A stretch of 64,000 bases of DNA. Origin: Octopus sinensis. Lineage: Eukaryota. A model generated the notes under the pieces. That model made no database searches and had not been told where the DNA came from. It saw only the letters and a program-made list of their open reading frames with translations. A program made the translations under genes and the position numbers. The stretch's first letter is position 1; every line of letters begins with the position of its first letter. The stretch lies in the NCBI RefSeq assembly GCF_006345805.1, contig NW_021836152.1, positions 124,001 through 188,000 on the forward strand. The letters are read 5' to 3'. This document shows, piece by piece, positions 1 to 36,730 of this stretch.

Positions 1-1012
1 ACTATTTCAAAGGCCGGGTGATCACAGGAGAATCAACAGCCCTCCAATGGCTGGGAGTGCGATATAACTGCTTTTGTTGTGACATCTCTCTTTTGTAATA
101 CTTATGATGTAGAATAGTTGTTTGTTTGGCAGGAATGTATTGGCTGTTTGGGGAGGGAGTCGGAATTGCCATGTGCAAAGGTTCTCTCCTTCTATTTTTC
201 CTCAGACGCAGCCAAAACGCACAGCCTTCGAACGACAAGGCACATAGCCTGCGATCGGCAAAACACAAAGTTGAAAATTTCATGAGAGAACAAAGGTATG
301 AGTCAGGGAAGATGGTAAGTCTCTCAAAAACTGCAGCAGGAAGTCTCCTTCGTTAGTATGTCTTTGATTGCGCAAAAGTGTTTAGATCCCTAACAGGACT
401 AAAAGATACACGTCCCTGCTTCGTTGAGTAAACAAATGTGGCATATTTCGGAATCAAGTTGCAACCATAACATGTGTGTGTTTGTTTATGTGTCATTGTA
501 TGCCTTTCTGTTTGGGTGTATGTGTGTGTTTTTAGAGGACATGAATTACGTATTTCATTTTAATAAGCTCACTGCAGTTTCTAGTAGTTACAGTGCATGC
601 AGAGATGGGTGCTTGGGAATAAGCTTATAGTTTCTTCGAAGCTTCTAAAACGATATATAAATATGCATATATGTGTTTGCTTAAGATTGTTTGAATGCGT
701 CTGTGTGTATGCAGTGGGGACCGAAGATCTTTTTTGTTTCCAAAAAATTACTATGTTAGTCGGGAATCGCAATTTGTAACAAATGGACACATTTTCATGT
801 ATTCTATGTTGTAGCAGACCAGAAACATATAAAACAGTTATGCTCTGAAAAATCTTGGTCCCGGCAATTTTTTTGGGTCGGATGTGCCAGAAAGGGTGTT
901 ACCCGGGCAACTAGGGCAACACCCCTGCCTCAACCACTGGTATCTATGTAGACATGTAAGCTTGTTGCATTTATATGTGGATGGATGGACGTATGTATGC
1001 AGGTAAGCTTGA

Positions 1013-1131
1013 TGTATGTATGTATGTATGTATGTATGTATGTATGTATGTATGTATGTATGTATGTATGTATGTATGTATGTATGTATGTATGTATGTA
1101 TGTGTGTATGTATGTATGCATGTATGTATGT
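1013..1131. repeat. (TATG)n microsatellite
   Basis: Direct reading. The paralog near 22627-22722 is 24 nt shorter. Confidence 0.95.
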
Positions 1132-1392
1132 AAGTATTATGAATGTGTACGCGTGTGTGATTTATTGTGTCACCACTATACAAAAAGGTAAACAATGCTA
1201 ATTTCTTACAGAGAGAAAGTTGTGTGAAATATTTTGAGAAGAGGATTGTTGTCTATTTTAGGACCAAAGCTTTGTTGTTTACTTCACTTGACTTAACATT
1301 TAGAACATACTTAAACAACCAGCCACTGTCTTGTGTGTCCCGACTACTACTCCTAGAGCCCATAGAAGATTGTTTTTAGTCAACCATCCATC

Positions 1393-2853
1393 ATGTCAGC
1401 TACCTACGCATCGAAACTGAGATCTGCAAGTAGGGCTTCTCATCAAGATGATGGTCCTACCAATAGTCAGCTCAACGAACAGTTGCTGTTGCTCAAACAA
1501 GAGGTTGAGCACTTAAAGTCTGTTGTTGCTCTCTTACTGAATAAACAGTCTCCTGTTGACGCAGAGTCACCCTTGATTTCTTCCCTGGAGACGTCCAAAC
1601 CGAAGGGAACAAAATCGAGGCGGCCAAAGAAGGCGAAGGAACCGGCGGTCGTTTCTGCACATGATCGTTCCCGTGCGGATTCTTCCTCATCTGCCTTTTC
1701 GGTCCCGGAGGTTCCCCAACCTAATTTGAGGAGCGTAGACTCAAACCCACCTGAAGACCGTTGTTCTCCCCAAAAGAAGAAACGTAGTCAAAACTCCAGT
1801 GGGGCGGATTTAGCTATGAAACCTGACCACGATAAACGGTCTCCTGTTGACGCAGGGTCACCCTTGATTTCTTCCCTGGAGACGTCCAAACCGAAGGGAA
1901 CAAAATCGAAGCGGCCAAAGAAGGCGAAGGAACCGGCGGTCGTTCCTGCACATGATCGTTCCTGTGCGGATTCTTCCTCATCTGCCTTTTCGGTCCCGGA
2001 GGTTCCCCAACCTAGTTCGAGGAGCGTAGACTCAAACCCACCTGAAGACCGTTGTTCTCCCCAAAAGAAGAAACGTAGTCAAAACTCCAGAGGGGCAGAT
2101 TTGGCTATGAAACCTGATCACGATAAAATCTGTTTGGATTCTCCTTCACTTGTCCTTCCCATTAATGCCATTGCTCAACCAATTCTGAACGATCTCGATG
2201 TGGGTTCATCTGGGGAGTGGTGCTCCCCCAAACCGAAGAAGAGGCAGTGCAGTTCCAAACCAGGCGGGAAAATTATGACCACTAAATCCATTCCGATCGA
2301 CCCCACAGGCCGACATAAGTCCGATGGCTATGAAACCACCCTTTCGAAATCCTCCAATGAAGAATCGAATACCGCAGCTCATAGTAGAGAACTTTTTGCC
2401 CACTCAAGATCGGCAATAATATATGGCAAGGCTGAATCCACCTGTGAAACAGGCATAAACCGCCTAAAAGATGACATTAATTTTGTTTCCGTTTTGGTTG
2501 GAAAATTGTTCTCTGTGAACGAAAATGTCAGTGTTCTTAAGGTCGCTCGGCTAGGAAGATTCCAAGCGAACCCAACCGCAGATACTAGACCACGCCCAAT
2601 AAGGGTAATCTTTTCTTCTGATCGGGAGGCTTCAGTCTTTCTGAACAGAGCTCAGACGCATGCCTGGGAGGACCCCAATATGGGTTTTCGCGAGGAATAC
2701 TCACTAAGAGAGAGAATTCGCCGGAGGAACCTGATATCCGAGCTAAAGATGAGGAAACAAATGGGAGAGAAGGGTTTACGAATCCAAGATGGACAGATAA
2801 TCAAGTCCTACCTCTGGTCCCATGCTGTAGTGCTGACAGGGAAAGTGATGTGA
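1393..2853 (+). CDS. LINE ORF1 protein, 486 aa (N-terminal coiled coil, Ser/Pro/Lys-rich repeat, C-terminal RRM-like region)
   Basis: Intact ATG ORF directly upstream of ORF2. Motifs AIIYG..E, V.RLGR...RPRPIRV.F and SLRER..RRNL are typical of CR1/Jockey-group ORF1. Confidence 0.85.
   Translation: MSATYASKLRSASRASHQDDGPTNSQLNEQLLLLKQEVEHLKSVVALLLNKQSPVDAESPLISSLETSKPKGTKSRRPKKAKEPAVVSAHDRSRADSSSSAFSVPEVPQPNLRSVDSNPPEDRCSPQKKKRSQNSSGADLAMKPDHDKRSPVDAGSPLISSLETSKPKGTKSKRPKKAKEPAVVPAHDRSCADSSSSAFSVPEVPQPSSRSVDSNPPEDRCSPQKKKRSQNSRGADLAMKPDHDKICLDSPSLVLPINAIAQPILNDLDVGSSGEWCSPKPKKRQCSSKPGGKIMTTKSIPIDPTGRHKSDGYETTLSKSSNEESNTAAHSRELFAHSRSAIIYGKAESTCETGINRLKDDINFVSVLVGKLFSVNENVSVLKVARLGRFQANPTADTRPRPIRVIFSSDREASVFLNRAQTHAWEDPNMGFREEYSLRERIRRRNLISELKMRKQMGEKGLRIQDGQIIKSYLWSHAVVLTGKVM
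1540..2127 (+). repeat. Two tandem 291-bp (97-aa) in-frame repeats inside ORF1
   Basis: TAAAC(A/G)GTCTCCTGTTGAC at 1542 and 1833; GATAAA at 1831 and 2122. Confidence 0.95.
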
Positions 2854-4583
2854 GGGCAAATCGAAGTGAAGTTGATACCCCCGTCAACGATGCTATCTCT
2901 GATGCCCTTTATTCTGCTTGTTCCCCAACTCCCGCCCCTCAGACTTCACAGCTCAGCATCGTCTACACCAACTCGTGCTCCTTATTCCCAAAGTTCAGTG
3001 AACTATTTACACTGGCCCTACGCGACTCCCCTGATGTGATAGCTATCACCGAGACTTGGCTGACTCCAGCAGTAAAGGACTCAGAGATCCACCTGCAGGG
3101 CTACGTCCTTTTCAGATGTGACAGAGGAAAAAGGCGAGGTGGAGGTGTTGCTGTGTATGTTAAGTCGGAGCACAAACCGTCCTGCGGTATTCTACCCACA
3201 AATGCTCAACCTACAACCAAATTCGATGCCGTCTATTGCAAGCTGAGCCTATCTGAGTTTTGCCTGCCCGTGTTGGCTGTCTACAGGCCGCCTCTAGCCG
3301 ACCCCCAGGACGATGCTCATCTACTCGAAGCGATAAGATTCGTTTCAGCTTCGCATGACTGCTTGGTACTAGGCGACTTCAACGCTCCCACGATCGTTTG
3401 GCCCGCATCAATTTGTACAACATCTTCCCGGTTCGGCCAGGCCCTTCTTGACGTGGCTGAAGATTGTTTTCTATCGCAACATGTTGAATATCCGACAAGG
3501 CATCGGTCTGGGCAGCAGCCATCTATGCTAGATCTGGTATTCTCCCGCTATCCAAGATCAGTGTCAGACGTATCTGTGTGCGCCCCTCTTGCCAAGAGTG
3601 ATCATGCGGTCCTGAAGTTCGTCATGCACACAACTTTTTCCACGCCCACGATTACTTCGCTGCCACGTAGAGTCTTCTCTGCAATTAATCTTGAAATTCT
3701 AACCGAGGCTTCCGCGCTTCTGGACTGGCGTTCCCTGATGACGTTGTCCTCAGTTGACGAACTATGGTCATCCCTCAAAGCATATGTAATCTGTTTGACT
3801 GACCAGGCAGTTCCCGTTGGACTTCCCAAGAGGAAGAAACACAAGCCCTGGGTGACGAAGAAGGTTAAACGAGAACGTCGACTCAGAGATATTGCTTGGG
3901 CTGAATTCAAAAATCTGGATTCGACTGCAGCTTTTGAGGTGTACAAAACTCAACGAGACCGAGCCGTGAAAATTGAAAAGAAAGAACGCTTCAGTTATGA
4001 ATACAAAATCGCGGCAAATGCCAGTAGCAATCCAAAAACCTTCTTTGCCCATGTCCAGCGGAATTCCCGCTTGAACAACCAGATTGCAACGTTGGTAGAC
4101 TCAACAGGCGTATCGATTGAGGACCCTTATCAACAGAGTCAATTATTTGCCGAGGCTTTTTCAACTATTTTCAAACAAGATGATGGTCGTGAACCCCCTC
4201 CATTTGATAGATCGGTACCTCCAATGCTTCGATTGATCATCACGCGGGACCAAGTCAAACGTGTTATTCAAGGCCTCGATGTCAACAAGGGTCACGGCCC
4301 TGACGGCATACACCCACGGGTTATCAAAGCGTTGGCTCCGGTCATCTGCGAGCCCTTAACACGACTATTCAATATGTCATTGGCGACGGGTGTTATACCT
4401 GCAGACTGGAGAACAGCGATAATCTGCCCAATTTTCAAGAAAGGGAGCCGCGAAGACCCGCTTAACTACCGACCGGTTTCCCTTACATCAATAATCATCA
4501 AGATGTTCGAAACCATCCTTAAGAAAAGTATGATGCTCCACCTCCTAAACACAGCCTCGATCACTGATTCCCAACACGGCTTC
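2850..4583 (+). CDS. LINE ORF2 (APE endonuclease plus N-terminal RT), 3'-truncated
   Basis: EN motifs YTN, DVIAITETWL, GGGVAVY, AVYRPP, GDFN, LDLV, SDH. RT motifs GPDGI, YRPVSLTS, QHGF. After 4583 it reads into foreign DNA. Confidence 0.92.
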
Positions 4584-4634
4584 CATCTGCTAAGATGGAG
4601 CAATCATCTTATGTGTATGTATATGTATATATAT

Positions 4635-4726
<92 letters not shown>

Positions 4727-4844
4727 TATATATAATATTTCATAACTTTAAAGTTTATGAAAGCTCACCGTGTTTTGTCAATTATAAATAATCCATATAA
4801 ATATATGCCCTCGACGGAAAAGTAGTGTTTGCAGTACAAATATA

Positions 4845-4897
<53 letters not shown>

Positions 4898-5881
4898 ACG
4901 GGCGGACCCCCCGTCGAACGAAAGCTGTTACGGAATCCCTCACACAGGCCCGTTCGATGCAGCGAATGTTCGCCACGAAGACTCGGAGAGGAGAGAGAGA
5001 CAACAACAACAGCACCAGGAAGAAGAGACACAGAGGCAATTGGCTCACATTTAACGCTAGTTTATGACAATCATTACAACATCAAATACAATGTTAAATA
5101 CATCAGACATATCAAAGAAAATACATGCAAGAAACAGGTATACAACAGGTAAATACAAGCAAGTAACAGAATCAACACATCACAGCATTTAATCTGTCCG
5201 GGTAACAACACATCAAATGCAATAACAACAGCATTTCAAGAGTTCACGTCCGGAGACAACAGTTATGTTTCAAATCACATTAAAGTTACAGTTCAAAGGG
5301 CATTAAAGGCCTATACAGTTCAATGTTCATTACACAGTTCTCTTTCCAACAACTCTGTACACAATGTCTTTACACAGTTCACATTGCTCTTTTCACTGTC
5401 TCATTTCTTTTCAACAGTCTCTTTACATCGATTCTTTTTCCTTCTTTTTCTTCACATATCAATACACAATTCACGTACCTTAGTTCCTACTAGAATAGCC
5501 AGTATCTCATATTGCACCTCATCTCTCTCAGTACTGCTAACTCCAACTTGCTAAACACTTGCCCTGAATTCCAAATCCTCGCTCCTAAATCCAACCGCTC
5601 GCCTTGACGACCAAATACCGACTGCCCAAAACCTCCTGCTCTGTCACTACCTTCAATCTCTCTCTTAGCTCTAATACTCTCTCTATCGCCGCTCAGATTC
5701 CTTAATCTGTCTTCCTCACTACTTTCTTCTTCCTCTTCTTCACTGTCTCTAACACACTGAACTGCTTACTTAAGGAGGCAGCCCTCCAAATGAACCCTAA
5801 TTCACCCGAAGGTGTCGGGGAGTCTCCCCAGAGCTAATTAATCAACCCGCATCCGGCAGAACAATGGATTCATTGCCAAAT
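4583..5881 (+). repeat. Segment B, reverse complement of 34072-35387
   Basis: CCATCTGC(T/C)AAGATGGAGCAATCATC at 4583 matches RC of 35387. The match ends at CATTGCCAAAT (5881/34072). Confidence 0.93.
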
Positions 5882-5920
5882 GTAGGTCGCCGGCTCTGTC
5901 CTTAAGTTGAACTCACAACA
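4894..5920 (+). mobile_element. Solo LTR (Gypsy-like), about 1027 bp
   Basis: Starts TGTTAC and ends CAACA (TGTT..AACA inverted ends), flanked by ATAT on both sides, non-coding, inserted in (TA)n. Confidence 0.7.
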
Positions 5921-6578
5921 ATATTTATATATTTATATATATATAACAACCCTTTCCAGAAAATAAGAAAACCAAAACAACACCCAAACACCGATACACA
6001 CCTGTCTAAAAATCGGAACCTTCACTACTTTCAAAAAAGAATACAGGACCTAACCCTATCTCTGTAAGCAGCCAGCGATACAATATCAGGAATACCCCCA
6101 CTTCAAGCAGAGAAAGGATAAATCAACACCCACAGCATAGACACTGCAACCTTATCCCCACCCAAAAGAGTTACCAACGAAATCTCCGTCCCATCAACCG
6201 GTTAAACAACCATGCACAACAAACCCACACCACTTACAATGATTACCAACGAAGGCCTCCTAGAACACCACACCCGAATATGGGATATCGGGATGCTCTC
6301 CTCAATACTGCCCCAAGAACACACACCATAAATCACAACAGGAGACCCCACATCAACAAAGAACAACTATATAATAGCTACCGTCCCAACCACCGCATTC
6401 ATTTTTTAGACCCAATACGCAAACACAGAGACACAAGATAGCACCAAACAAGCAGGAGGAACCAAAAGTAATAAAAATTATCAATCTAACTCACAAGGAA
6501 CTAACAGCAAACCAAATAAACATACTTTCCAAAGGACTCAAGTTTGAACCCACCCCACAACACCCCAACTACAACGAA

Positions 6579-8732
6579 ATGAAAGAAGACATCGCAGAAT
6601 TCTGCAGAAAATTAAGACTTACTGAGGAGCTATACGATAAATACAACGAGGACGAATCGTTAGCCAGAAATAGGAGTAACTACACCCCCTCGAAAGGTAA
6701 GAACAAAACACTTGATGATTTCTGTGACCACATATCTAATTACCCATATCAACATATGCACAAACAAAAACACAAACCAAACTTCAGCAAAAAAGAATGG
6801 GCTGAGTTGAACAAATTAAAACAAGATAAAACAATAACAATCAAAGAGGCCGATAAAGGGAGTGCTGTTGTCTTAATGGATACGACATTTTACATAACTT
6901 TGGTACTTTCTATGCTGGAAGACACAACATACTATGAAAAGGCACAAAACTACAGTCAACAAAAAATAATGAGGGAACTAAAATCCATATTAAACCCATA
7001 CAAAGCAGGGCTCACCGACAAAGAATATGATTGTATGACCAATTTCACAAGTAAAACCAGCCAATTCTACGGTATACCTAAGATCCACAAAAGTGAAAAA
7101 AATAACCAACGCATGCAAGATAGCTACAGACAAAATAATTAAAGTCCCTAATCCTAATGACCTCAAATTGAGACCCATAATAGCAGGTCCCGCATGCGAA
7201 GCCCACCGCCTCAGTAACTTTTTAGACACCCTGTTAAAACCACTCCTCAAACATATCAAAAGCTATATAAGGGACGACTTAGATATGCTCAATCACTTAC
7301 CGAATACTATAAACAAAAACACCATACTGGTATCCTTCGATGTAGTCAACCTCTACTCCAATATCCCCCACAACCTAGGACTAGAGGCAATCCAATTCTG
7401 GCTAGAGAATCACGCCAACGAACTACCACACCGCATCAAAAACGAATTCGTGATAGAAGGGGTTAAATTCATCCTGGAAAATAACTTCTTCGCCTTCAAT
7501 GACAACTTCTACCGACAAAAATCGGGGACTGCGATGGGTACACGAATGGCCCCCTCCTTTGCCAACCTAGTCATAGGATATCTAGAGATCAGTCTGTATC
7601 GTAAGGTTCTAAAAAGATATGGCAGCCCTTTCTCCATCTACATAGAAAACAACTGGAAGAGATATCTAGATGACTGTTTCATTCTTTGGCATAAAAATAT
7701 AGAAAAACTCATAGAATTCCAGGAAATTTTAAACGGACTGGACGTAAACATCCAATTCACGATGGAATATAGCCAGCAACAACTCCCCTTCCTCGATATC
7801 CTCATTAAGAAAGCTAATAATATAATAGAAACAGACATATACTATAAGCCTACAGACTCTAAGCAATATCTTCCATTCAATTCATGCCACCCCAGACACA
7901 CCAGGATGAATATCCCCTTCAATCTAGCAAAAAGGATATGCACTATAGTCTCTAACGCAAACACCAGAGACACACGACTACAAGAACTAAAAGATACCCT
8001 TATCACCAGGAACTATCCACCTTCACTTATTGACAAGTGCATTCAACGTGCCCTTCAACTTAACATCAAGGAACTGAGACATCCCAAATCAAAGAAAAAC
8101 TTACAACCAAAAGCCGTACCATACATCTCCACACACAACCCTCTCAATAACGAAGCCTTCGGCACCATCCTCCACAACATACCCCTCCTAAAAAAGACCA
8201 CAGAATGAACACAATCCTCCAAACACACACGATCATAAAAAGCAAAAGACAGCCTAGATCCATGAAAAGTCTCCTAACACAAGCCCGAAGTCACTCTTCA
8301 ACACAGAAGCCGACAGTAAAAAAATGTGGAAGACCCAATTGCGGGATATGCGACTATCTAATTGAGGGATCAGAGTTCTCCTTCAAACAGGGACAACGGT
8401 TTACAGTGAAAAGCAACTTCACATGTGCTTCGGAGAACCTAATATACTCACTAACCTGCTCCGGGTGTCAAGAGCAGTACATAGGCCAAACAAAAAATAG
8501 TTTGCGTAAACGAATGGCCCTGCACAGATCCCAGATAAAAATTCCCCAAAACAGAAAAATAGCTTTTAGCCAACACATAGATACTTGCGCCAACAAAAAA
8601 ACACCAAGCTTCAGGATTTTCCCCCTCTACCAATTTAGGGACGATACAACCTCGAGACAACGAATAAGTAAAGAAAATCTCTTTATTACAAAATACAGGC
8701 CACTTCTTAACGGGTCTACGACAAACAATTAA
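6579..8732 (+). pseudogene. Penelope RT + GIY-YIG endonuclease, two frameshifts
   Basis: IKEADKGSAVV, FYGIPKIHK, LRPII, SFDVVNLYSNI, GTAMGT, RYLDD, LPFLD, YYKPTD, then CGRPNCGIC and NLIYSLTC..YIGQT. Confidence 0.9.
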
Positions 8733-8861
8733 TATACCTCAACTTTAGAATAAAAGAAATATATACACACACAAATATTACATTCCATAGAATCCATTAC
8801 TAATCAGCCCCATCGCAGCTATACTTTCACCCATTCATATTCTCCCTTCTCTGTTTTTTTT

Positions 8862-9040
8862 TCTTCTTCTTCCTCTTCTTCTTCATCATCATCATTATCA
8901 TCATCATCGTCGTCATCATCATCACCACCATCATCATCATCATCATCTTCTCCTTCTCCTTCTTCTTCTTCTTCTTCTTCTTCTTCTTCTTCATCATCAT
9001 CATCATCATCAACATCGTCATCTTCTTCTTCTTCTTCTAC
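8862..9040. repeat. Compound (TCT)n/(TCA)n microsatellite
   Basis: Direct reading. Confidence 0.9.
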
Positions 9041-9385
9041 TTCTCCACCTTCTACCCCTTAACCTTGTCACTAATGTCTTTTAGTATAACGCCTACACAA
9101 ATTCCATAAACAATTCCTGAATTGGACTGCGACTGCTGGCCGCCACTGACCATTCAAAATACGACCATCAGGGCACTCCCAGATTTTCCCACTCCCACCC
9201 CCTCTCCACATCAGCATTCTTCTTCTCCTACCCTACCAAGAACTCACAACGACCTCGAACACACAAGTGCAAACAAGGGAGTCAGAGAAAGGCAGAATGC
9301 CACTTATATCTGAACACTACTATAGAAATATTCCTTTAAAAAAACTTTTCTTCTAATTTTTCTAAATTTAATTATTTAATCGTTA

Positions 9386-9423
9386 CAGTTGAAAAGGTCT
9401 CAAAATGACCGAAACCGGTACTG
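9386..9423 (+). ncRNA. Minimal type I hammerhead ribozyme motif (U3-A8 core variant)
   Basis: CAG-UUGAAAA-GGUC(UCAAAAU)GACC-GAAA-CCGG-UA-CUG, downstream of a Penelope ORF in sense orientation. Confidence 0.75.
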
Positions 9424-9496
9424 AAAGATTCACTATAAAATTATTTTAGCATTTTCTATTTTTGACTTGTTTTTTCATATATATATATATATATAC

Positions 9497-9540
<44 letters not shown>

Positions 9541-9543
<3 letters not shown>

Positions 9544-10282
9544 ATATTTTGGAATGGTCATATTGCCAGTTTAGCCAATAAAAACACACGCACTATATAT
9601 TTGGTGTTATTTTGCTTCGGTGTTATTTATTTTTTACATTAATCTTAATCTTATTTCGGCCAGAGTTCTTTCGTCACATTCCTGTGACCGCATCAGTGGT
9701 CCTTTGTTTTCTTCTTTCTTATTTGTGTCTCTCCTTACTAACCGTCAGCCATTTTGTATTTGTATTGTATGTTGTCATTTGCGTATGCTTATATCTCTAT
9801 GTGCGTCTATGTTTATTTAATGTGTGTATGTGCGGGGATGCCTGTAATATTTGTGTCTTCTGTTTATATACGTTCATGTATATAAATACAACCTCATATC
9901 GCCAATACAAGAATAACAACTGTACAGGCGCATGAGGAGAGAGAAAAGTTCCTCAACTCCCACATGATGATGTGGACAATTGTTCTGGGACCCCAGAAAC
10001 GTACAGCAAATAATTTCAAAGCCTGGAACAGTGATATCCCGGCACTGTATGGACTTCGCAAGGACCATAAAGTAATTACTGACCCTATAGCAGGACCACC
10101 AACAAGACCAGTCTGTAGAGCGAATATCGCTAGCAATTACAGAATCTCCTACTTCCTCTCAATGATCATACGCCCTATAATCCGGATGTCACCTGATGTT
10201 TGTGACAGCACAGCAGATCTCCTCAGCAGGATCAATGACTGTAACAACACTTGTGACCTGGCAGGATGTATGGTGGGTAGCA
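9541..10282 (+). repeat. Segment C, reverse complement of about 33306-34050, including a Penelope RT fragment from about 9915
   Basis: ORF 9964..10356 matches 33175..33624 (LYGLRKDHK, TRPVC) up to GGTAGCA at 10282. Confidence 0.93.
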
Positions 10283-10284
10283 TA

Positions 10285-10354
<70 letters not shown>

Positions 10355-10355
<1 letters not shown>

Positions 10356-10396
10356 GAGCGGCGAAATCGATTTTATATTTGATCCTTTCGGGGTTG

Positions 10397-10451
<55 letters not shown>

Positions 10452-10925
10452 GAGCGGCGAAATCGATTTTATATTTGATCCTTTCGGGGTTGATAAATTA
10501 CATCGGGGTCGATGTAATCATCTAGTCCCCACCACCAAAATTAGGAAAAAAACAGCCCATTTTATTTACAAGTAAGAATTATTATTTCCTCTACGCACAA
10601 CAGATTAGACTGGAACAAGAAAAGTTCTTAACATCGGGCTACAGCAAGTAACCTTATATGCGAAAAACCTTCCTAAGTTTCCTAGCTGTCCCTAATAACA
10701 CGGTTTCCTGGAGCTGCACTAAAGTAGGTTTTGCGCCTAGTTTTTCTATTTCTTTGTGAAACCCTTAGGGATAATTCGTAATGCACTTTTAGCTACAGGG
10801 ATACATTTTATCCACACATTTTCTAGCCTCTATAACTGAATGGCTAGACCCTGGTACTTTGCTATTTTCTGTATAGTTTCCATATTGATTTTCTCATCAT
10901 TTGGGATTGTAAAGTCAATTACCTG
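10355..10925 (+). repeat. Segment D (SINE remnant plus Dong 3' end); direct copies at 36731-37137 and 45527-46013
   Basis: GCGGCGAAATCGATTTTA...ATGGCTAGA(C/T)CCTGGTA is present three times. Confidence 0.92.
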
Positions 10926-11500
10926 ACACTTTCCTTTCTCTTAGGCTACTACTTCTAAATGAGGCTTTGTAGCTTCTATTAATCTCTCGGCCTGAATAAT
11001 AAAATCCCACTATGTCTTATATTTTTTCTTATTTTCTAGCACTTTACTAGATTCATATTTATAACACTTATCTGTATGGTCAATTTCTAGCTATCTACAT
11101 AATTTCCTCTGGATTATTCTACACAACTTATCATGAGTAGTTCTTTACCCTTTGATTTACTTAACCTGCTTTGTTAATCTGCCTGATTTTCTTCTATCCT
11201 GGATTTTATCCAAATAGTCCTCAATATCAAACCTTGTGTTATTACTAGCAACAGTTTTGTTTCCCTTTTCAGCATTGCTTTGTGAATCCACAGCTGTCTC
11301 ATTATTATTTTCTCCTGAGATTATCTTTGGAGATCTACCGTGCAAAGCCTTCTCTTGCCAGTCAGATAATCTTACTTCATTTTTTTTAAAGGTCTTCAAC
11401 CCCTTTGGACTTTTGGTTTCCCTATCTCCTACTGTTACACTTGAGGCTCTTTATGAAATTTCATCATTGTTACCTGCATATGAGGCTATATTTACTATAG
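10620..11500 (-). pseudogene. Degenerate R4/Dong-type LINE C-terminus (REL endonuclease region)
   Basis: Minus-strand translation: WQEKALHG; THDKLCRII; WDFIIQAERLIEATKPHL; CQVIDFTIPND; KIAKYQDLAI; LLGTARILRKV. It parallels ORF 58843..60432. Confidence 0.75.
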
Positions 11501-11569
11501 CTAACTTTGCAGAGTCGTGTTGTTGTTGTTCTCCTTCTTGTGGCCACCCAAGATTTCTTATGTCCGCCC

Positions 11570-11960
11570 GATAGATTTTATCTTCCTCCATTACTATTAT
11601 ATATTCGAGGAGCCTTAAATTTTAAAGATTTACCGACTGGGAATCGAAAAGCTGAAGTATTTGAAACATTATCGAAGACAGCAGAAAAATATACTTTACG
11701 GAGTTATGATGGTAAGTGAATGAGATGTCTAGAAGAATCTGCAGGTATTGATGTTTCGCCAATCTTAACCGAGGCGAAGCTATGCATAGCTATATGCAGT
11801 TGACGCGCTTAAATACCCTGTAGAACTGTATCAGCTGATTGAAAGTACATTCATTGAAGACTTTTAACGAAGCTACTTTAAAATTTCCTTTAACAATTCA
11901 TACAGGGAATAGATTTGATATTGTGATTGCATGGTGTTAGTTGTACCACATTAGGCTTAC
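11570..11960 (+). pseudogene. Degenerate Helitron Rep-Hel internal fragment
   Basis: FYLPPLLLYIRGALNFKDLPTGN...RCLEE...LGLPDP resembles the conserved YLRLLLLHVRG.TSF.DLRTVNG...CL.EA...FGLP.P region (recalled consensus). Confidence 0.6.
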
Positions 11961-12109
11961 CAGACCCAGTTCTTAATTTTCATTCTAATGTTCAAACGGA
12001 TATTTTGGAGGACCGAACTTAATTTGAGGAGGGAATCAAAAGACTTCATTTCAGACAAATAGTTGTTTGAGAGAATAGTTGATGCCATTTAGAGTGAGGA
12101 AGCATTCTT

Positions 12110-12430
12110 TTCGTTTCACTTGCATCTGGTAGGTCTGGGAGAAAACTATGTTTACAATAACAAAGAATAGTATCAAGGGGAACTGGCTGTGATTATGCTG
12201 AAAAAGTAGATTTGTCTCGCCATGTGAGAAATAAATTCGTGAAATGAAAACCCATTCTTCTTAACTGTTGCCAGTAAATATTTCTGCACTCTTCTATAAT
12301 TATTGCTCATGTTCTATTTAGTAAACTCTTCAGGGGTCTGAGGTTTCGTTCTCACATTATAATACTCCAAACGTTCATCACCAGAATATGAGGTGGAATT
12401 CACGTGGATTTTGTTCATTTAACAACTCCA
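12110..12430 (-). pseudogene. Degenerate Helitron Pif1 helicase C-terminal fragment
   Basis: PPHIL...RNL...AEIFTGN...VFISRI...RRQFPL...SQT. Copies on the + strand at about 41650-41950 and 46860-47110. Confidence 0.6.
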
Positions 12431-12616
12431 CTGGAAAATTTATAGCTCATCTTCCTCATTCAAATGATCATCATCTTGATTATGATAATCTTCACAATCC
12501 CCCTCCAGCTCATCATATTCGTTACGATCGTCATCAATATCTTTTTCTCAGCATATAGCTAGCAAATTTATTTCTAAGCCCTTATTATAATTACACGGAC
12601 ACACACATATATTATA

Positions 12617-12669
12617 TCTATCTGTCTATCACTCTATCTATCTATCTATCTATGTAAGCCTCTATCTAC

Positions 12670-12766
<97 letters not shown>

Positions 12767-14077: not shown

Positions 14078-15183
14078 TTAGTTATTTAGTTAATTTGGCT
14101 CAAAAGCAAATAGCAAGGCCATGTAGGGGGACATGGAGTTAAGTACAGGGTGGTGTTCATGTAAAGAGTTCAGGCCACTTGAGGTCCAGGGAGGCTTTGA
14201 ACAAAGCGGTCGTCGGCATCTTCACCATCTCGTCTGGCAGCTTGTTCCACGGATCCGCAACCCGGACGGAGAAAGCTCCTCTCCTTCGATTGAGATGAAA
14301 TCGTCGCAGGTAGAGCTTTTCGGAATGACCCCGCAGCCGACGCTCCGGAGCAGGAGTGAAGAACAGCTCTTTCGAGAGGTTACACTTCCCGCTTATGATG
14401 TTGTGGGCGAGAATGAGATCACCACGGCGGCGGCGTTTTTCAAGAGAACAAAGGTCGAGCGTCCTCAGCCTTTCTTCGTAGGACAAATTTTTGAGACCAT
14501 GAACCATGCGGGTAGCCAGCCTCTGGACTCTTTCGAGGTGCTTTATGTATTTGAGGAGATAAGGAGAAGAGGCTTGAATCCCATACTCCAATATAGGTCT
14601 CACCAGCGTGACATAGAGTGGTAGGAATATGGCTGATGTGAGCATTCCGAATGACCGTCGAATCAAAAACAGAATTCCGCGCGCTTTGTTGGCAGCATGG
14701 ACGCACTGGGCCGAAGGCGAAAAGGTGGAATCCACCAAGATACCCAGGTCCTTTACCTGATCGGTCCTCTCCAGCAGCAGACGACCCGGCTCGAAATCAA
14801 GTTGAGTTGCAGGAGTAGAGCCGACAGGCAGATGACAGCACTTTGACACGTTCAGACACAGGTCCCAATTGTTAGACCACTTCCAAATTTGGTGGAGGCA
14901 TCGACGAAGATCCTCTATACTACCGCGAGGAGCGACCAGTTTGATATCGTCGGCAAATAGAAGGGTGTGTTGCGTGAGGTCGTCGGGCAAGTCATTTATG
15001 AAGACTAAGAACAACAAGGGCCCAAGCACTGAACCTTGAGGCACGCCACTGCTCGCACTGGAGACGTCGGACCGCGAACCATTAACTTGGACTTGGAAGG
15101 AGCGATCTGAGAGGAAGGCACCAACCCATCGTACAATATCCGGATGGAAACTATATGCTTGAAGCTTGACAAGTAGTAGGCGG
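14078..15183 (-). mobile_element. CR1-group LINE, 5'-truncated 3' copy (same family as copies 1 and 2)
   Basis: Matches 18338-19028 until GTAGGCGG. It carries the ORF2 end (LKWPELFT*), a short 3' UTR and a TAACTAAATAACTAA tail. Confidence 0.9.
14157..15044 (-). CDS. CR1 ORF2 C-terminal RT fragment
   Basis: PQGSVLGP, FINDLP, FADD, KDLG, RPILEY, RRRRGDL, LRGH, WNKLP. Confidence 0.9.
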   Translation of the reverse strand: MPQGSVLGPLLFLVFINDLPDDLTQHTLLFADDIKLVAPRGSIEDLRRCLHQIWKWSNNWDLCLNVSKCCHLPVGSTPATQLDFEPGRLLLERTDQVKDLGILVDSTFSPSAQCVHAANKARGILFLIRRSFGMLTSAIFLPLYVTLVRPILEYGIQASSPYLLKYIKHLERVQRLATRMVHGLKNLSYEERLRTLDLCSLEKRRRRGDLILAHNIISGKCNLSKELFFTPAPERRLRGHSEKLYLRRFHLNRRRGAFSVRVADPWNKLPDEMVKMPTTALFKASLDLKWPELFT

Positions 15184-17407: not shown

Positions 17408-17779
17408 TAAATTACATGTGTGTGATACGGGGTGTACTTATGTATGTATAACAAGAAGATATATATACCAAATATTTGCAAAATATTAATAATTTCAGAT
17501 AATAATTCAGAATTCTCTAACATTTACATCTTCAATGGATCAGATCAGTAGCTTCAATTAGCATATTCAAAGGAGGGAGGGGGGGAAGATAAACCAAAAT
17601 TTTAAGATATTAAGTATTTCTGATATTCTAGTTTCAATGTTCAATAATTTCAATAGAACTTTATTTGATTTTTCCCTTCTCATTTCTATGGAACATATTG
17701 CTTATTACAGAAGTTGAATAGTTAATGTGTTTTATTGGGTAGTTTTTTTCAATAATTTCAAACAAAAACATTTTCATTA

Positions 17780-17888
17780 CCATATCACGTTGAAAGCATT
17801 GGTTCTTGTGCAATCACCGAAGTTAAGTAATGTCGAGCCTAGTTAGTACTTAGATGGGTGACCGCTTGAGAAACATAGGTGCTGTAAG
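17780..17888 (+). pseudogene. 5S rRNA pseudogene
   Basis: CCATATCACGTTGAAA..GGTTCT.GT.C.ATCACCGAAGTTAAG.AA.GTCGAGCC.GTTAGTACTT.GATGGGTGACCGC.TG.GAA..C.GGTGCTGTA aligns with invertebrate 5S (recalled). The first about 8 nt are missing and many changes are CpG transitions. Confidence 0.85.
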
Positions 17889-17902
17889 TGTCACACACTA
17901 CA

Positions 17903-18023
17903 GGTGTAGAAGTGGCTGTGTGGTAAGTAGCTTGCTTACCAACCACATGGTTCTGGGTTCAGTCCCACTGCGTGGCACATTGGGGAAGTGTCTTCTACAA
18001 TAGCCTTGGGCCGACCAAAGCCT
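17903..18023 (+). mobile_element. tRNA-derived SINE 5' portion
   Basis: A box TGGCTGTGTGG and B box GGTTCAGTCCC. A full reverse copy is at 51630-52024. Confidence 0.8.
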
Positions 18024-18024
18024 T

Positions 18025-18333
18025 ATAATATTAATAATAGTAACAACAACAACAACAATAATAATAATATAATAACAAAATAACAATAATATATTATAAT
18101 ATTAATATAATAATAATAATAATAATAATAAAATAATAAAAAATAATAATATAATATAATGTTAATAATAATGATAATAATAATAATAATAATAATATTA
18201 ATGATAATAATAATAATGATAATAATAATGATAATGATAATAATAAGAATACTAATAAGAATAATAAAAATAATAATAATAATAATAGTAATATTAATAT
18301 TAATAATAATAATATTAATAATAATGATATTAA
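18025..18333. repeat. Degenerate (AAT)n microsatellite
   Basis: Direct reading. Confidence 0.95.
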
Positions 18334-18342
18334 TTTGTCTTC

Positions 18343-20910
18343 CTAGGACAAATTTTTGAGACCATGAACCATGCGGGTAGCCAGCTTCTGGACTCTTTCG
18401 AGATGCTGTATGTCTTTGAGGAGATAAGGAGAAGAGGCTTGAATCCCGTATTCCAATATGGGTCTCACCAGCGTGACATAGAGTGGTAGGAATATGGCTG
18501 CTGTGAGCATTCCGAATGACCGTCGAATCAAGAACAGAATTCCGCGTGCTTTGTTGGCAGCATGGACGCACTGGGCTGAAGGCGAAAAGGAGGAATCCAC
18601 CAAGATACCCAGGTCCTTTACCTGATCGGTCCTCTCTAGCAGCAGACGACCCAGCTCGAAATCAAGTTGAGTTGCAGGAGGAGAGCCAACAGGCAGATGA
18701 CAGCACTTTGACACGTTCAGACACAGGTCCCATTCGTTAGACCACCTCCAAATTTGGTGGAGGCATCGACGAAGATCCTCTATATCACTGCGAGGAGCGA
18801 CCAGTTTGACATCGTCGGCAAATAGAAGGGTGTGTTGCGTGAGGTCGTCGGGCAAGTCATTTATGAAGACTAAGAACAACAAGGGCCCAAGCACTGAACC
18901 TTGAGGCACGCCACTGCTCGCACTGGAGACGTCGGACCGCGAACCATTAACTTGGACTTGGAAGGAGCGATCTGAGAGGAAGGCACCAACCCATCGTACA
19001 ATATACGGATGGAAACTATATGCTTGAAGCTTGACAAGTAGTAGGCGGTGGTTTACCGAGTCAAAAGCTTTGGCAAAGTCCAATAAAACGATGTCAACAG
19101 CATCACTATCATCGAGGATGCGCGTCACCAATTCTTCCATTACTAGTAAGTTGGTCAAGCATGATCTCTTCGGCACGAAGCCGTGTTGGGAATCAGTGAT
19201 CGAGGCTGTGTTTAGGAGGTGGAGCATCATACTTTTCTTAAGGATGGTTTCGAACATCTTGATGATTATTGATGTAAGGGAAACCGGTCGGTAGTTAAGC
19301 GGGTCTTCGCGGCTCATTTTCTTGAAAATTGGGCAGATTATCGCTGTTCTCCAGTCTGCAGGTATAACACCCGTCGCCAATGACATATTGAATAGTCTTG
19401 TTAAGGGCTCGCAGATGACCGGAGCCAACGCTTTGATAACCCGTGGGTGTATGCCGTCAGGGCCGTGACCCTTGTTGACATCGAGGCCTTGAATAACACG
19501 TTTGACTTGGTCCTGCGTGATGATCAATCGAAGCATTGGAGGTACCGATCTATCAAATGGAGGGGGTTCACGACCATCATCTTGTTTGAAAATAGTTGAA
19601 AAAGCCTCGGCAAATAATTGACTCTGTTGATAAGGGTCCTCAATCGATACGCCTGTTGAGTCTACCAACGTTGCAATCTGGTTGTTCAAGCGGGAATTCC
19701 GCTGGACATGGGCAAAGAAGGTTTTTGGATTGCTACTGGCATTTGCCGCGATTTTGTATTCATAACTGAAGCGTTCTTTCTTTTCAATTTTCACGGCTCG
19801 GTCTCGTTGAGTTTTGTACACCTCAAAAGCTGCAGTCGAATCCAGATTTTTGAATTCAGCCCAAGCAATATCTCTGAGTCGACGTTCTCGTTTAACCTTC
19901 TTCGTCACCCAGGGCTTGTGTTTCTTCCTCTTGGGAAGTCCAACGGGAACTGCCTGGTCAGTCAAACAGATTACATATGCTTTGAGGGATGACCATAGTT
20001 CGTCAACTGAGGACAACGTCATCAGGGAACGCCAGTCCAGAAGCGCGGAAGCCTCGGTTAGAATTTCAAGATTAATTGCAGAGAAGACTCTACGTGGCAG
20101 CGAAGTAATCGTGGGCGTGGAAAAAGTTGTGTGCATGACGAACTTCAGGACCGCATGATCACTCTTGGCAAGAGGGGCGCACACAGATACGTCTGACACT
20201 GATCTTGGATAGCGGGAGAATACCAGATCTAGCATGGATGGCTGCTGCCCAGACCGATGCCTTGTCGGATATTCAACATGTTGCGATAGAAAACAATCTT
20301 CAGCCACGTCAAGAAGGGCCTGGCCGAACCGGGAAGATGTTGTACAAATTGATGCGGGCCAATCGATCGTGGGAGCGTTGAAGTCGCCTAGTACCAAGCA
20401 GTCATGCGAAGCTGAAACGAATCTTATCGCTTCGAGTAGATGAGCATCGTCCTGGGGGTCGGCTAGAGGCGGCCTGTAGACAGCCAACACGGGCAGGCAA
20501 AACTCAGATAGGCTCAGCTTGCAATAGACGGCATCGAATTTGGTTGTAGGTTGAGCATTTGTGGGTAGAATACCGCAGGACGGTTTGTGCTCCGACTTAA
20601 CATACACAGCAACACCTCCACCTCGCCTTTTTCCTCTGTCACATCTGAAAAGGACGTAGCCCTGCAGGTGGATCTCTGAGTCCTTTACTGCTGGAGTCAG
20701 CCAAGTCTCGGTGATAGCTATCACATCAGGGGAGTCGCGTAGGGCCAGTGTAAATAGTTCACTGAACTTTGGGAATAAGGAGCACGAGTTGGTGTAGACG
20801 ATGCTGAGCTGTGAAGTCTGAGGGGCGGGAGTTGGGGAACAAGCAGAATAAAGGGCATCAGAGATAGCATCGTTGACGGGGGTATCAACTTCACTTCGAT
20901 TTGCCCTCAC
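18343..20910 (-). CDS. CR1 ORF2 (APE + RT), 855 aa, lacking the C-terminus
   Basis: Complete EN plus RT motifs QHGF, DFAKAFDSV, GVPQGSVLGP, FADD. Confidence 0.92.
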   Translation of the reverse strand: MRANRSEVDTPVNDAISDALYSACSPTPAPQTSQLSIVYTNSCSLFPKFSELFTLALRDSPDVIAITETWLTPAVKDSEIHLQGYVLFRCDRGKRRGGGVAVYVKSEHKPSCGILPTNAQPTTKFDAVYCKLSLSEFCLPVLAVYRPPLADPQDDAHLLEAIRFVSASHDCLVLGDFNAPTIDWPASICTTSSRFGQALLDVAEDCFLSQHVEYPTRHRSGQQPSMLDLVFSRYPRSVSDVSVCAPLAKSDHAVLKFVMHTTFSTPTITSLPRRVFSAINLEILTEASALLDWRSLMTLSSVDELWSSLKAYVICLTDQAVPVGLPKRKKHKPWVTKKVKRERRLRDIAWAEFKNLDSTAAFEVYKTQRDRAVKIEKKERFSYEYKIAANASSNPKTFFAHVQRNSRLNNQIATLVDSTGVSIEDPYQQSQLFAEAFSTIFKQDDGREPPPFDRSVPPMLRLIITQDQVKRVIQGLDVNKGHGPDGIHPRVIKALAPVICEPLTRLFNMSLATGVIPADWRTAIICPIFKKMSREDPLNYRPVSLTSIIIKMFETILKKSMMLHLLNTASITDSQHGFVPKRSCLTNLLVMEELVTRILDDSDAVDIVLLDFAKAFDSVNHRLLLVKLQAYSFHPYIVRWVGAFLSDRSFQVQVNGSRSDVSSASSGVPQGSVLGPLLFLVFINDLPDDLTQHTLLFADDVKLVAPRSDIEDLRRCLHQIWRWSNEWDLCLNVSKCCHLPVGSPPATQLDFELGRLLLERTDQVKDLGILVDSSFSPSAQCVHAANKARGILFLIRRSFGMLTAAIFLPLYVTLVRPILEYGIQASSPYLLKDIQHLERVQKLATRMVHGLKNLS

Positions 20911-33660: not shown

Positions 33661-34071
33661 CTGTACAGTTGTTATTCTTGTATTGGCGATATGAGGTTGT
33701 ATTTATATACATGAACGTATATAAACAGAAGACACAAATATTACAGGCATCCCCGCACATACACACATTAAATAAACATAGACGCACATAGAGATATAAG
33801 CATACGCAAATGACAACATACAATACAAATACAAAATGGCTGACGGTTAGTAAGGAGAGACACAAATAAGAAAGAAGAAAACAAAGGACCACTGATGCAG
33901 TCACAGGAATGTGACGAAAGAACTCTGGCCGAAATAAGATTAAGATTAATGTAAAAAATAAATAACACTGAAGAAAATAACACCACATATATAGTGCGTG
34001 TGTTTTTATTGGCTAAACTGGCAATATGACCATTCCGAAATATAACAATATATATATATATATCTATATAT

Positions 34072-35157
<1,086 letters not shown>

Positions 35158-35266
35158 ATATTATGTGTACCGCAAACACTACTCTTTCTGTCGAGGGCAT
35201 ATATTTATAGGGATTATTTATAATTGACAAAACACGGTGAGCTTTCATAAACTTTAAACTTATGAA

Positions 35267-35336
<70 letters not shown>

Positions 35337-35339
35337 TGT

Positions 35340-36640: not shown

Positions 36641-36716
<76 letters not shown>

Positions 36717-36730
36717 TTTATTTTATTATT

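What the first reader, a model, noticed from the sequence alone, without database searches (positions are those of the whole stretch)
1..12765. The first 12.8 kb is a shuffled mosaic of four downstream loci, with derived breakpoints on both sides
Seen in sequence: 1-4583 = RC 19177-23733; 4583-5881 = RC 34072-35387; about 9541-10282 = RC 33306-34050; 10451-10857 = direct 36731-37137; 11161-12765 = RC 41330-42918. Broken elements give polarity. The left region is derived where it cuts the CR1 RT (4583) and the Penelope RT (10282). The right region is derived where it lost the LTR end plus Penelope 1 and split a Dong frame. Inference: a recent segmental duplication followed by several template-switch or end-joining events in both copies, resembling FoSTeS/MMBIR. 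An assembly or haplotype artefact remains possible.
Basis: partly seen in the sequence, partly recalled or inferred. Interest (0 to 1): 0.7.

Follow-up and report, generated by a model that had tools for sequence, protein, structure and literature searches.

The report
Transposon nest with locally repeated pieces
The first 12.8 kb really does repeat four stretches found further along the window, but every stretch is a piece of a mobile element in what looks like an octopus-type genome, so this is most likely an ordinary, stepwise-built transposon nest and not one exotic replication accident.

Summary

- **What the blocks are.** Each is a fragment of a repeat family: a CR1-like LINE (A), a Penelope-like element with its upstream region (B+C), the 3' end of a Dong/R4-like LINE with a (TAA)n tail (D), and an unclassified 1.6-kb repeat ending in (TATC)n (E).
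- **Other copies.** Each family has further, older copies in the window.
- **Junctions.** No junction between two different blocks is shared by left and right.
- **Breakpoint 5884/9515.** This is a 3.6-kb Penelope insertion into an (AT)n tract. The right side is the empty site, not a loss.
- **Block D.** Its three copies share the 3' tail but have three different 5' ends, as expected from retrotransposition.
- **Age.** Divergence is uneven: A is 0.5% and B-E about 1.5% (p = 4e-6), so there was no single event.
- **Junction signatures.** The left junctions show 0-1 bp of microhomology, which is not an MMBIR signature.
- **What still needs DNA-level events.** The left LINE and Penelope copies are cut internally, and four families recur within 45 kb.

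Genome-wide copy numbers, the sequence left of the window and spanning reads would settle it. Interest is low.

The parts
1..4583 (+). LINE-A, left copy (block A). CR1-like LINE with a 5' region, intact ORF1 (1393-2853) and ORF2 with an APE domain (2850-). It is cut inside ORF2 at 4583, and the match runs off the window edge at position 1.
   Evidence: The substitution identity to 19177-23733 is 99.5%. Homologues of ORF2 align only up to nt 4583.
4584..5884 (+). Block B: non-coding region upstream of the Penelope-like element. It carries (TA)n tracts at 4620-4738 and 4840-4893.
   Evidence: It equals RC 35387-34069. The junction at 4583 has 1 bp (C) of microhomology.
5885..9514 (+). Pen1: a private Penelope-like insertion with RT at 7039-8205 and GIY-YIG at 8151-8729. 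Its four overlapping open frames sit in two alternating reading frames, which implies at least three frameshifts. It ends in (AT)n at 9477-9540. The right copy is the empty site.
9515..10282 (+). Block C: the 5' part and RT N-terminus of the Penelope-like element (ORF 9886-10353). It is cut in the RT at 10282.
   Evidence: It equals RC 34073-33306, and the right copy continues into the RT.
10283..11160 (-). D, left copy. This is a 5'-truncated 3' end of a Dong/R4-like LINE. Its (TAA)n tail reads as (ATT)n on the + strand at 10286-10494 and includes a perfect 96-bp tandem duplication. The degenerate ORF remnant reaches nt 11135.
11161..12766 (+). E, left copy. An unclassified 1.6-kb repeat that starts AACCTGC... 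and ends in (TATC)n at 12615-12766. It contains a weak antisense Pif1-like remnant.
14160..15183 (-). Third LINE-A copy. An ordinary 5'-truncated fragment that carries the natural C-terminus of ORF2. It is 96.5% identical to 18338-19048.
17772..18325 (+). SINE with a 5S-rRNA head (5S at 17772-17890) and a (TAA)n tail at 18025-18325. The tail abuts the cut 3' end of the right LINE-A copy.
18338..23733 (-). LINE-A, right copy, with ORF1 at 20907-22367 and ORF2 (APE + RT) at 18343-20910. It is also 3'-truncated: about 100 aa of ORF2 and the 3' UTR are missing.
33306..35387 (-). Right counterpart of blocks C+B. It is contiguous here, and the (AT)n tract at about 34050-34075 is the empty Pen1 site. 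It continues downstream into the Penelope RT (about 32600-33305) and upstream into Xup (35388-35761).
36643..37137 (-). D, right copy, with its (TAA)n tail at 36643-36731. It is stacked on another Dong-like 3' end (36332-36640) that has its own tail (36116-36331). Its 5' side stops at 37137, 69 bp short of the third copy.
37138..41318 (-). LINE2: an APE-type LINE found only on the right, with ORF1 at 39048-41192 and ORF2 at 37128-38855. It is cut inside the RT at 37137 and is unrelated to D.
41319..42918 (-). E, right copy. Its microsatellite, (AGAT)n on the + strand, lies at 41323-41447.
42919..42987 (.). A 69-bp, 100% identical direct copy of E-internal 42506-42574, placed immediately outside the end of E. 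It looks like a templated insertion or template jump and is private to the right side.
44003..47112 (-). Third locus, collinear with the right one: Xup 44003-44444 (96%), D' 45501-46013 (92-93%) and E' 46727-47112 (90%). This is an older tandem duplicate or a composite repeat.

Best explanation
The first 12.8 kb is a nest of transposable-element fragments built in several steps in a microsatellite-rich, cephalopod-type genome. It is not the product of one replicative template-switching event.

**What the sequence shows**
- Block A is the 5' 4.6 kb of a CR1-like LINE.
- Blocks B+C are one contiguous piece, the upstream region and RT start of a degenerate Penelope-like element. On the left it is interrupted by a separate Penelope-like insertion (Pen1) in an (AT)n tract.
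- Block D is a 5'-truncated 3' end of a Dong/R4-like LINE that targets (TAA)n.
- Block E is a discrete 1.6-kb repeat with a (TATC)n end.

**What I infer**
- D (at least two of its three copies) and Pen1 arrived by ordinary retrotransposition.
- The two non-canonical left junctions are end-joining scars. These are the LINE ORF2 cut at 4583 and the Penelope RT cut at 10282, next to D's tail. They could come from a deletion, or from insertion of one element into another followed by target loss.
- The same kind of scar is seen at 18338 and 37137 on the right.
- The close left-right resemblance of the Penelope/upstream block, and perhaps of the LINE pair, probably reflects one or more local DNA-level duplications. 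The region is visibly prone to them, as the right/third collinear units show.
- These events happened at different times: A is 0.5% diverged and the rest about 1.5%.
For: - **Every block is TE sequence.** APE/RT, RT + GIY-YIG, a restriction-like endonuclease (RLE) motif and (TAA)n flanks were found.
- **Empty-site proof for Pen1**.
- **D copies.** All three share the tail end, but their 5' ends differ: about 11160, 46013 and 37137.
- **Dong-like 3' ends are frequent.** They recur at seven or more places and stack in each other's tails. Dong sits in TAA repeats (PMC3774820).
- **Published background.** Dong-R4 and CR1 are the most numerous young LINEs in Octopus vulgaris (PMC13282606).
- **The ends of E look like element ends.** One is a microsatellite. 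The other is a fixed start, next to which only the right copy carries a 69-bp template-jump-like extra.
- **No inter-block junction is shared** between left and right.
- **Uneven age.** Heterogeneity across all five blocks gives chi-square p = 2e-13. A against the pooled rest gives p = 4e-6.
- **Junction microhomology is 0-1 bp**.
- **Internal cuts are common here.** Every long LINE copy (about 4 kb or more) in the window is 3'-cut, whatever its left-right relation.
- **Older copies of each family exist in the window**.
- **An older DNA-level duplication is visible.** The right and third loci are collinear.
Against: - **Clustering.** Four families each have their closest relative within 45 kb. 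The left region is far more covered by high-identity matches than the rest of the window (about 69% against about 12%). This is hard to get from independent insertions unless the families are very abundant.
- **Order.** The blocks occur in the same order (A, B/C, D, E) on both sides.
- **Age of B-E.** Divergence of B, C, D and E is statistically compatible with one age (p = 0.11).
- **Non-canonical cuts.** The left LINE and Penelope copies are cut in ways retrotransposition does not produce, so DNA-level events are needed in any case.
- **The Penelope block looks inactive.** It is degenerate and carries more than 1.3 kb of non-coding upstream sequence with three (TA)n tracts. It does not look like an active element.
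- **Missing data.** The true 5' end of the LINE, the extent of block A left of the window and genome-wide copy numbers are all unknown.
Confidence: 0.5

Rival explanations
1. One recent complex rearrangement of the FoSTeS/MMBIR type, or chained end-joining, copied four nearby templates into the left locus. Later changes then occurred in both copies.
For: - The segments come from four loci within 45 kb, in both orientations but in the same order.
- The left breakpoints at 4583 and 10282 are internal to elements, and the right side is continuous there.
- B, C, D and E have compatible divergence.
- A 69-bp templated insertion at 42919-42987 shows that template jumping has happened at this locus.
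- The right and third loci show that the region duplicates at the DNA level.
Against: - A is significantly younger than the rest (p = 4e-6).
- Junction microhomology is only 0-1 bp.
- The boundaries of D and E coincide with a LINE tail and a microsatellite, not with arbitrary points.
- The left D copy carries about 300 bp of genuine Dong-like 5' sequence that the right copy lacks. About 235 bp of it is also absent from the third copy.
- One supposed rearrangement is a plain Penelope insertion with an empty site on the right.
- The 69-bp templated insert is on the right, not at a left junction.
Confidence: 0.2
2. Purely TE-level origin. All left and right pairs are independent insertions of currently or recently active families into a permissive, TE-dense region. 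A couple of later deletions followed, and no DNA-level duplication took place.
For: - Same-family older copies exist for every block in the window.
- D behaves as expected for independent 5'-truncated insertions.
- Both LINE-A copies keep intact ORF1s, so they are young.
- Octopus genomes carry thousands of young LINE, SINE and Penelope-like insertions (PMC13282606).
Against: - Two 5'-complete copies of one CR1-like family lie 15 kb apart, and both are 3'-cut.
- The Penelope block is degenerate, carries a long non-coding upstream region and is truncated at both ends.
- Four sibling pairs all link the left region with 19-43 kb. My rough estimate puts the chance of that pattern at a few percent at best.
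Confidence: 0.15
3. Assembly artefact. Repeat-induced mis-joins or partly collapsed or uncollapsed haplotypes in a TE-rich, heterozygous genome produced the left mosaic.
For: - The match starts exactly at the window edge, so its extent is unknown.
- The region is about 12% microsatellite and full of near-identical repeats. Assemblers fail in such places.
- Identities of 97-99.5% lie in the range of allelic or paralogous confusion.
Against: - The copies are not identical.
- The blocks are not collinear, as a haplotig would be.
- Private features look biological: the Pen1 insertion, the 96-bp tandem duplication and the different D 5' ends.
- There are no N gaps.
Confidence: 0.1
4. Chimeras made by reverse transcriptase. 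The same-strand junctions, LINE-A to the Penelope block at 4583 and LINE2 to D at 37137, arose when the RT jumped from one RNA template to another during target-primed reverse transcription.
For: - Both junctions join a 3'-truncated upstream element to a 5'-truncated downstream element on the same strand. That is the geometry expected from a template switch.
- The 69-bp extra at the 5' end of E on the right looks like an RT template jump.
Against: - The downstream partner at 4583 does not run to its own 3' end. It is cut at 10282 and followed by an element on the opposite strand.
- No target-site duplications could be found.
- A simple deletion between two neighbouring same-strand elements gives the same picture.
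Confidence: 0.05

Closest known systems
Nested transposable-element clusters (TE nests) with local duplications, as described for repeat-rich genomes including Octopus vulgaris (PMC13282606)
   Same: The region is almost wholly LINE, SINE, Penelope-like and Helitron fragments. Elements are inserted into one another and into microsatellites. Young and old copies of the same families lie side by side.
   Different: An unusually large share (about 69%) of one 12.8-kb stretch has a partner at 97% identity or more within 45 kb. Several elements are cut at their 3' side, which transposition alone does not do.
FoSTeS/MMBIR complex genomic rearrangements
   Same: There are several segments from nearby loci, in mixed orientation and joined head to tail. 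One nearby junction (42918) carries a templated 69-bp insertion.
   Different: - Junctions have 0-1 bp of microhomology.
- Segment ends coincide with element termini.
- The segments differ in age.
- One supposed junction pair is a retroelement insertion.
Dong / R4-clade LINEs that insert into (TAA)n repeats (Bombyx mori Dong; PMC3774820)
   Same: - The C-terminal CCHC and PD...D restriction-like endonuclease motif follow the RT.
- (TAA)n lies on both sides of the 58.8-60.6 kb copy.
- 3' ends are stacked in each other's tails.
   Different: - No full-length copy is present here, so absence of an APE domain and the single-ORF layout are unverified.
- The left D copy does not sit in a (TAA)n target on both sides.
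Penelope-like elements (RT + GIY-YIG)
   Same: Pen1 has RVT_1 and GIY-YIG in that order and lies in a (TA)n tract.
   Different: - No pseudo-LTRs and no hammerhead ribozyme were detected.
- The shared B+C element is degenerate and truncated at both ends on the left.

Membership tests
FoSTeS/MMBIR complex rearrangement | Several segments copied from nearby templates and joined in mixed orientation | tested here: met
   Five matches to four loci within 45 kb. Three blocks are inverted and one is direct.
FoSTeS/MMBIR complex rearrangement | Microhomology of about 2 bp or more, or templated insertions, at the new junctions | tested here: not met
   The junction at 4583 has 1 bp (C). The junction at 10282 has none, with a TAC filler before the (ATT)n tract. 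The only templated insertion (69 bp) lies on the right at 42919-42987.
FoSTeS/MMBIR complex rearrangement | A single event, so all copied segments have the same age | tested here: not met
   A is 0.50% diverged against 1.53% for pooled B-E, Fisher p = 4e-6. B-E alone are homogeneous, p = 0.11.
FoSTeS/MMBIR complex rearrangement | Junctions confirmed by spanning reads and polymorphic or absent in relatives | not testable with these tools
   No reads and no other assemblies of this species were available. The protein searches found nothing above 69% identity.
Segmental duplication (DNA-level) | At least 1 kb at 90% identity or more | tested here: met
   A is 4.58 kb at 99.5%. B+C is 2.07 kb. E is 1.6 kb.
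Segmental duplication (DNA-level) | The copy spans unique DNA or a junction between unrelated elements | tested here: inconclusive
   No junction between blocks is shared. Block B+C contains three (TA)n-separated segments. Its outermost 44-68 bp belongs to 'Xup', which also occurs on its own at 44003-44444 and 26492-26880. Whether these segments form one element is unknown.
CR1-clade LINE (block A) | ORF2 with an N-terminal APE endonuclease and RT, preceded by ORF1 | tested here: met
   Pfam Exo_endo_phos and RVT_1 in 18343-20910. ORF1 is 486 aa and intact in both copies.
CR1-clade LINE (block A) | Phylogenetic placement of the RT within CR1, and a CR1-type 3' end | not tested
   The only support is that many of the named homologues are bird RT proteins. 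No tree was built and no 3'-end analysis was done.
Penelope-like element (Pen1, 5885-9514) | RT followed by a C-terminal GIY-YIG endonuclease | tested here: met
   RVT_1 in 7093-8208 and GIY-YIG in 8205-8732.
Penelope-like element (blocks B+C and the right copy) | RT followed by GIY-YIG | tested here: inconclusive
   The RT is 27% identical to the Pen1 RT and a YVDD-containing frame is visible. Pfam found nothing in the two N-terminal frames. GIY-YIG is not confirmed.
Dong / R4-clade LINE (block D and the 58.8-kb copy) | Restriction-like endonuclease (CCHC + PD...D) C-terminal to the RT | tested here: met
   The motifs CRVC...H...C and RPDIILKD...LIDMT were read in 58846-60600. D aligns to this region at 32-43%. 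The motif assignment rests on my knowledge of R2/R4 endonucleases, not on a profile search.
Dong / R4-clade LINE (block D and the 58.8-kb copy) | Insertion into (TAA)n repeats | tested here: met
   (TAA)n lies on both sides of the 58.8-kb copy, and tails are stacked at 36.1-36.7 kb and 45.3-45.5 kb. This is not met for the left D copy, which has the Penelope RT on one side and E on the other.
Dong / R4-clade LINE (block D and the 58.8-kb copy) | Single ORF without an APE domain | not testable with these tools
   There is no full-length copy in the window.

The most novel reading that the evidence does not exclude
The left 12.8 kb records a genuine multi-template DNA-level rearrangement fixed in a cephalopod genome. 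It may be part of a much larger inverted duplication that continues left of the window, because block A is cut off by the window edge. Microsatellites and LINE tails would have served as the switch points.
Probability: 0.15. Interest if true: 0.5.

Novelty: already known. Interest (0 to 1): 0.2.

Why it matters
As it stands, this is a routine picture of how repeat-rich genomes are built. It mainly serves as a caution: high-identity shuffled matches inside a transposon nest should not be read as replication-based rearrangements until element termini, empty sites and copy numbers have been checked.

If the DNA-level reading were confirmed, the locus would give a small, datable example of local duplication and end-joining in a cephalopod genome. 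It might also show a link between microsatellite-targeting LINEs and loss of neighbouring DNA.

Tried and rejected
1. **LINE2 (37138-41318) and D as one Dong element with an internal deletion.** Rejected. A 912-aa relative of LINE2 (P0004, 69% identity) has a 550-aa C-terminal part with no similarity to D or to the 58.8-kb Dong-like ORF.
2. **The left Penelope/upstream block and the third-locus Xup as two halves of one copy, split by an inversion with a 68-bp staggered overlap.** Rejected. The overlap is no more alike between left and third than between left and right.
3. **The fragment 14160-15183 as the missing 3' half of the left LINE.** The positions almost fit, with a gap of about 128 bp. 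However, the fragment is 3.5% diverged from the right copy, against 0.5% for the left copy. Treated as an older separate copy.
4. **An LTR next to Pen1.** No long direct repeats were found.
5. **Hammerhead ribozymes or tRNA-derived heads to define element ends.** Rfam gave only a 5S hit and microsatellite noise, and there are no tRNAs.
6. **Other copies from the same genome, to define termini and copy number.** The best protein matches were 51-69% identical: an Octopus sinensis protein, an Argonauta hians protein and unnamed contigs. A relative's contig (L001) shares no 5' UTR similarity.
7. **Pfam on short frames in 1-900, 15.5-17.3 kb and E.** Nothing was found.

Full report
**1. Observation**

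| Block | Left | Partner | Identity |
|---|---|---|---|
| A | 1-4583 | RC 23733-19177 | 23 mismatches in 4557 bases, 2 gaps |
| B | 4583-5884 | RC 35387-34069 | 93-97%, three HSPs broken by (TA)n length changes |
| C | 9515-10282 | RC 34073-33306 | 98.6% |
| D | 10397-10856 | direct 36678-37137 | 97.4% |
| E | 11161-12747 | RC 42918-41319 | 97.0% |

Block A is cut off by the window edge, so its true extent is unknown. About 69% of 1-12765 lies in such matches. By my tally of the table, only about 12% of the rest of the window has high-identity partners outside the left region. The left region therefore really does stand out.

**2. What the blocks are**

The organism is probably a cephalopod. 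The only relative found for the LINE ORF1 is an Octopus sinensis protein, and a close named relative of a second LINE is from Argonauta hians. The window is 12% microsatellite.

- **Block A** is the 5' part of an APE+RT LINE with an intact 486-aa ORF1 in both copies.
- **Blocks B and C** are contiguous on the right (33306-35387). C holds the N-terminal RT frame of a degenerate Penelope-like element, which continues on the right into a YVDD-containing frame.
- **Block D** is the 3' end of a LINE on the minus strand.
  - It aligns at 32-43% to the C-terminal part of the ORF at 58846-60600.
  - That ORF carries YMDD, a CCHC motif and an RPD...IDMT restriction-like endonuclease motif.
  - That ORF is flanked on both sides by (TAA)n.
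  - The (ATT)n tract at 10286-10494 is D's tail.
- **Block E** is an unclassified 1.6-kb repeat. It has a fixed start (AACCTGC...), a (TATC)n end and a weak antisense Pif1-like remnant.

**3. Junction by junction**

- **4583.** LINE ORF2 interior is joined to the interior of the Penelope upstream region, with 1 bp of microhomology. The right LINE, the right upstream region and a third copy (44003-44444) are all continuous across these points.
- **5884/9515.** The left side carries a 3.6-kb insertion, Pen1.
  - It has RT and GIY-YIG domains, and its four overlapping open frames sit in two alternating reading frames, which implies at least three frameshifts.
  - It sits at the edge of an (AT)n tract.
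  - The right side reads ...CCAAAT^ATATAT..., a clean empty site.
  - There are no LTR-like repeats.
  - This is a gain on the left, not a loss on the right.
- **10282.** The Penelope RT is cut and followed by TAC and then D's tail. The right side continues the RT.
- **About 11160.** D's truncated 5' end meets the start of E.
- **12747.** The homology ends inside the (TATC)n tract.

None of these junctions is shared with the right side.

**4. The right side has scars of its own**

- External homologues align to the right LINE-A only as far as nt 18334. They align to the fragment 15200-14184 up to their own C-termini. The right copy therefore also lacks about 100 aa and its 3' UTR.
- The cut abuts the (TAA)n tail of a plus-strand SINE with a 5S-rRNA head (Rfam 69 bits).
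- At 37137, D is joined to LINE2, an unrelated APE-type LINE that is itself cut in its RT.
- Just outside the right E lies a 69-bp perfect copy of E-internal sequence, which looks like a template jump.
- Internal 3' cuts are thus common in this region, whatever the left-right relation.

**5. Evidence for element-level origin**

- The three D copies share the tail end but stop at about 11160, 46013 and 37137.
- The left copy carries about 300 bp of genuine Dong-like coding remnant that the right copy lacks. About 235 bp of it is also absent from the third copy.
- Dong-like 3' ends are frequent and stack in each other's tails.
- Older copies exist for every family:
  - LINE-A at 14160-15183 (96.5%).
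  - Xup at 44003-44444 (96%) and 26492-26880 (70-79%).
  - An 89-bp module at 28301-28389 (96.6%).
  - E' at 46727-47112 (90%).
- Octopus vulgaris is reported as 66% repeats, with Dong-R4 and CR1 the most numerous young LINEs (PMC13282606).

**6. Evidence for DNA-level events**

- Retrotransposition does not make 3'-cut LINEs or a Penelope copy truncated at both ends.
- The Penelope block is degenerate and carries more than 1.3 kb of non-coding upstream sequence with three (TA)n tracts.
- Four families have their closest relatives within 45 kb, and in the same order.
- The right and third loci are collinear over Xup, a microsatellite stretch, D and E. Local duplication therefore does occur here.
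- B, C, D and E are compatible with one age (p = 0.11). A is clearly younger, at 0.50% against 1.53% (p = 4e-6), and E is internally patchy.

**7. Verdict**

The best reading is a stepwise history. It combines ordinary insertions (Pen1, D, probably E), a few end-joining deletions or insertion-associated losses, and one or more local duplications at different times.

A single FoSTeS/MMBIR event is not supported. The ages differ, microhomology is absent, two blocks end at element termini, and one "breakpoint pair" is an insertion.

I cannot exclude that event, nor an assembly artefact, without three things: genome-wide copy numbers, the sequence left of the window, and reads. This kind of structure is well known, and interest is low.

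Noticed in passing
window 17772-18325: A full-length 5S rRNA match (Rfam 69 bits, gathering score 38) is followed by a SINE body and a 300-bp (TAA)n-like tail, so this is a SINE with a 5S head. The body alone recurs at 51902-52025 (89%, opposite strand) behind a different head.
   Followed up: partly
window 35319-37137 vs 44003-45944, and 41522-41926 vs 46727-47112: The right and third loci are collinear in the same order and orientation (Xup, microsatellites, D, E) at 90-96%, about 8.7 kb apart. LINE2 is present only in the right unit. An older Xup-like copy at 26492-26880 lies about 9 kb further upstream, which hints at an old tandem array.
   Followed up: partly
window 42919-42987: A 69-bp, 100% identical direct copy of 42506-42574 sits immediately outside the end of repeat E. 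It looks like a templated insertion or a reverse-transcriptase template jump.
   Followed up: partly
window 1541-2127 and 21633-22219: There is a 291-bp tandem duplication (two units, 95-96% alike) inside ORF1 of the CR1-like LINE. It is present in both copies and the frame stays open.
   Followed up: no
window 10301-10494: A perfect (100%) 96-bp tandem duplication comprises the (ATT)n tail plus the last 45 bp of the Dong-like element. It must be very recent.
   Followed up: no
window 58846-60673: A 5'-truncated Dong/R4-like LINE has an open 585-aa frame with YMDD, CCHC and PD...D endonuclease motifs. (TAA)n flanks it on both sides. Short relatives of its 3' end lie at 36265-36640, 56848-57070, 58327-58551 and 62256-62581.
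   Followed up: partly
window 28347-30350: An open 668-aa frame has no Pfam hit but a GIY-YIG-like C-terminus (27% to Pen1). It is probably another Penelope-like element. It shares only an 89-bp, 96.6% identical module at its 5' end with the B/C element, and it has a distant relative at 53719-54654.
   Followed up: no
window 37128-41192: LINE2 has an intact 715-aa ORF1 (a weak zinc-knuckle hit) and an ORF2 with APE and the start of the RT. Its relatives are 55-69% identical, among them an Argonauta hians protein. The RT is cut at 37137.
   Followed up: partly
window 43086-43859: A Pif1 helicase 2B-domain fragment (a Helitron-like remnant) lies on the minus strand. Weaker Pif1-like remnants lie inside repeat E at 41663-41854 and 46826-46939.
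   Followed up: no
window 50361-51161: This is a small local mosaic. 50361-50519 equals RC 50887-51045 (96%) and 50529-50684 equals direct 51006-51161 (99.4%). Both pairs lie next to long (TA)n tracts.
   Followed up: no
whole window: About 12% of the window is microsatellite, mainly (TA)n, (TAA)n and (ATAG)n, with a 535-bp (ATAG)n tract at 55306-55840. Most element boundaries fall at such tracts.
   Followed up: partly
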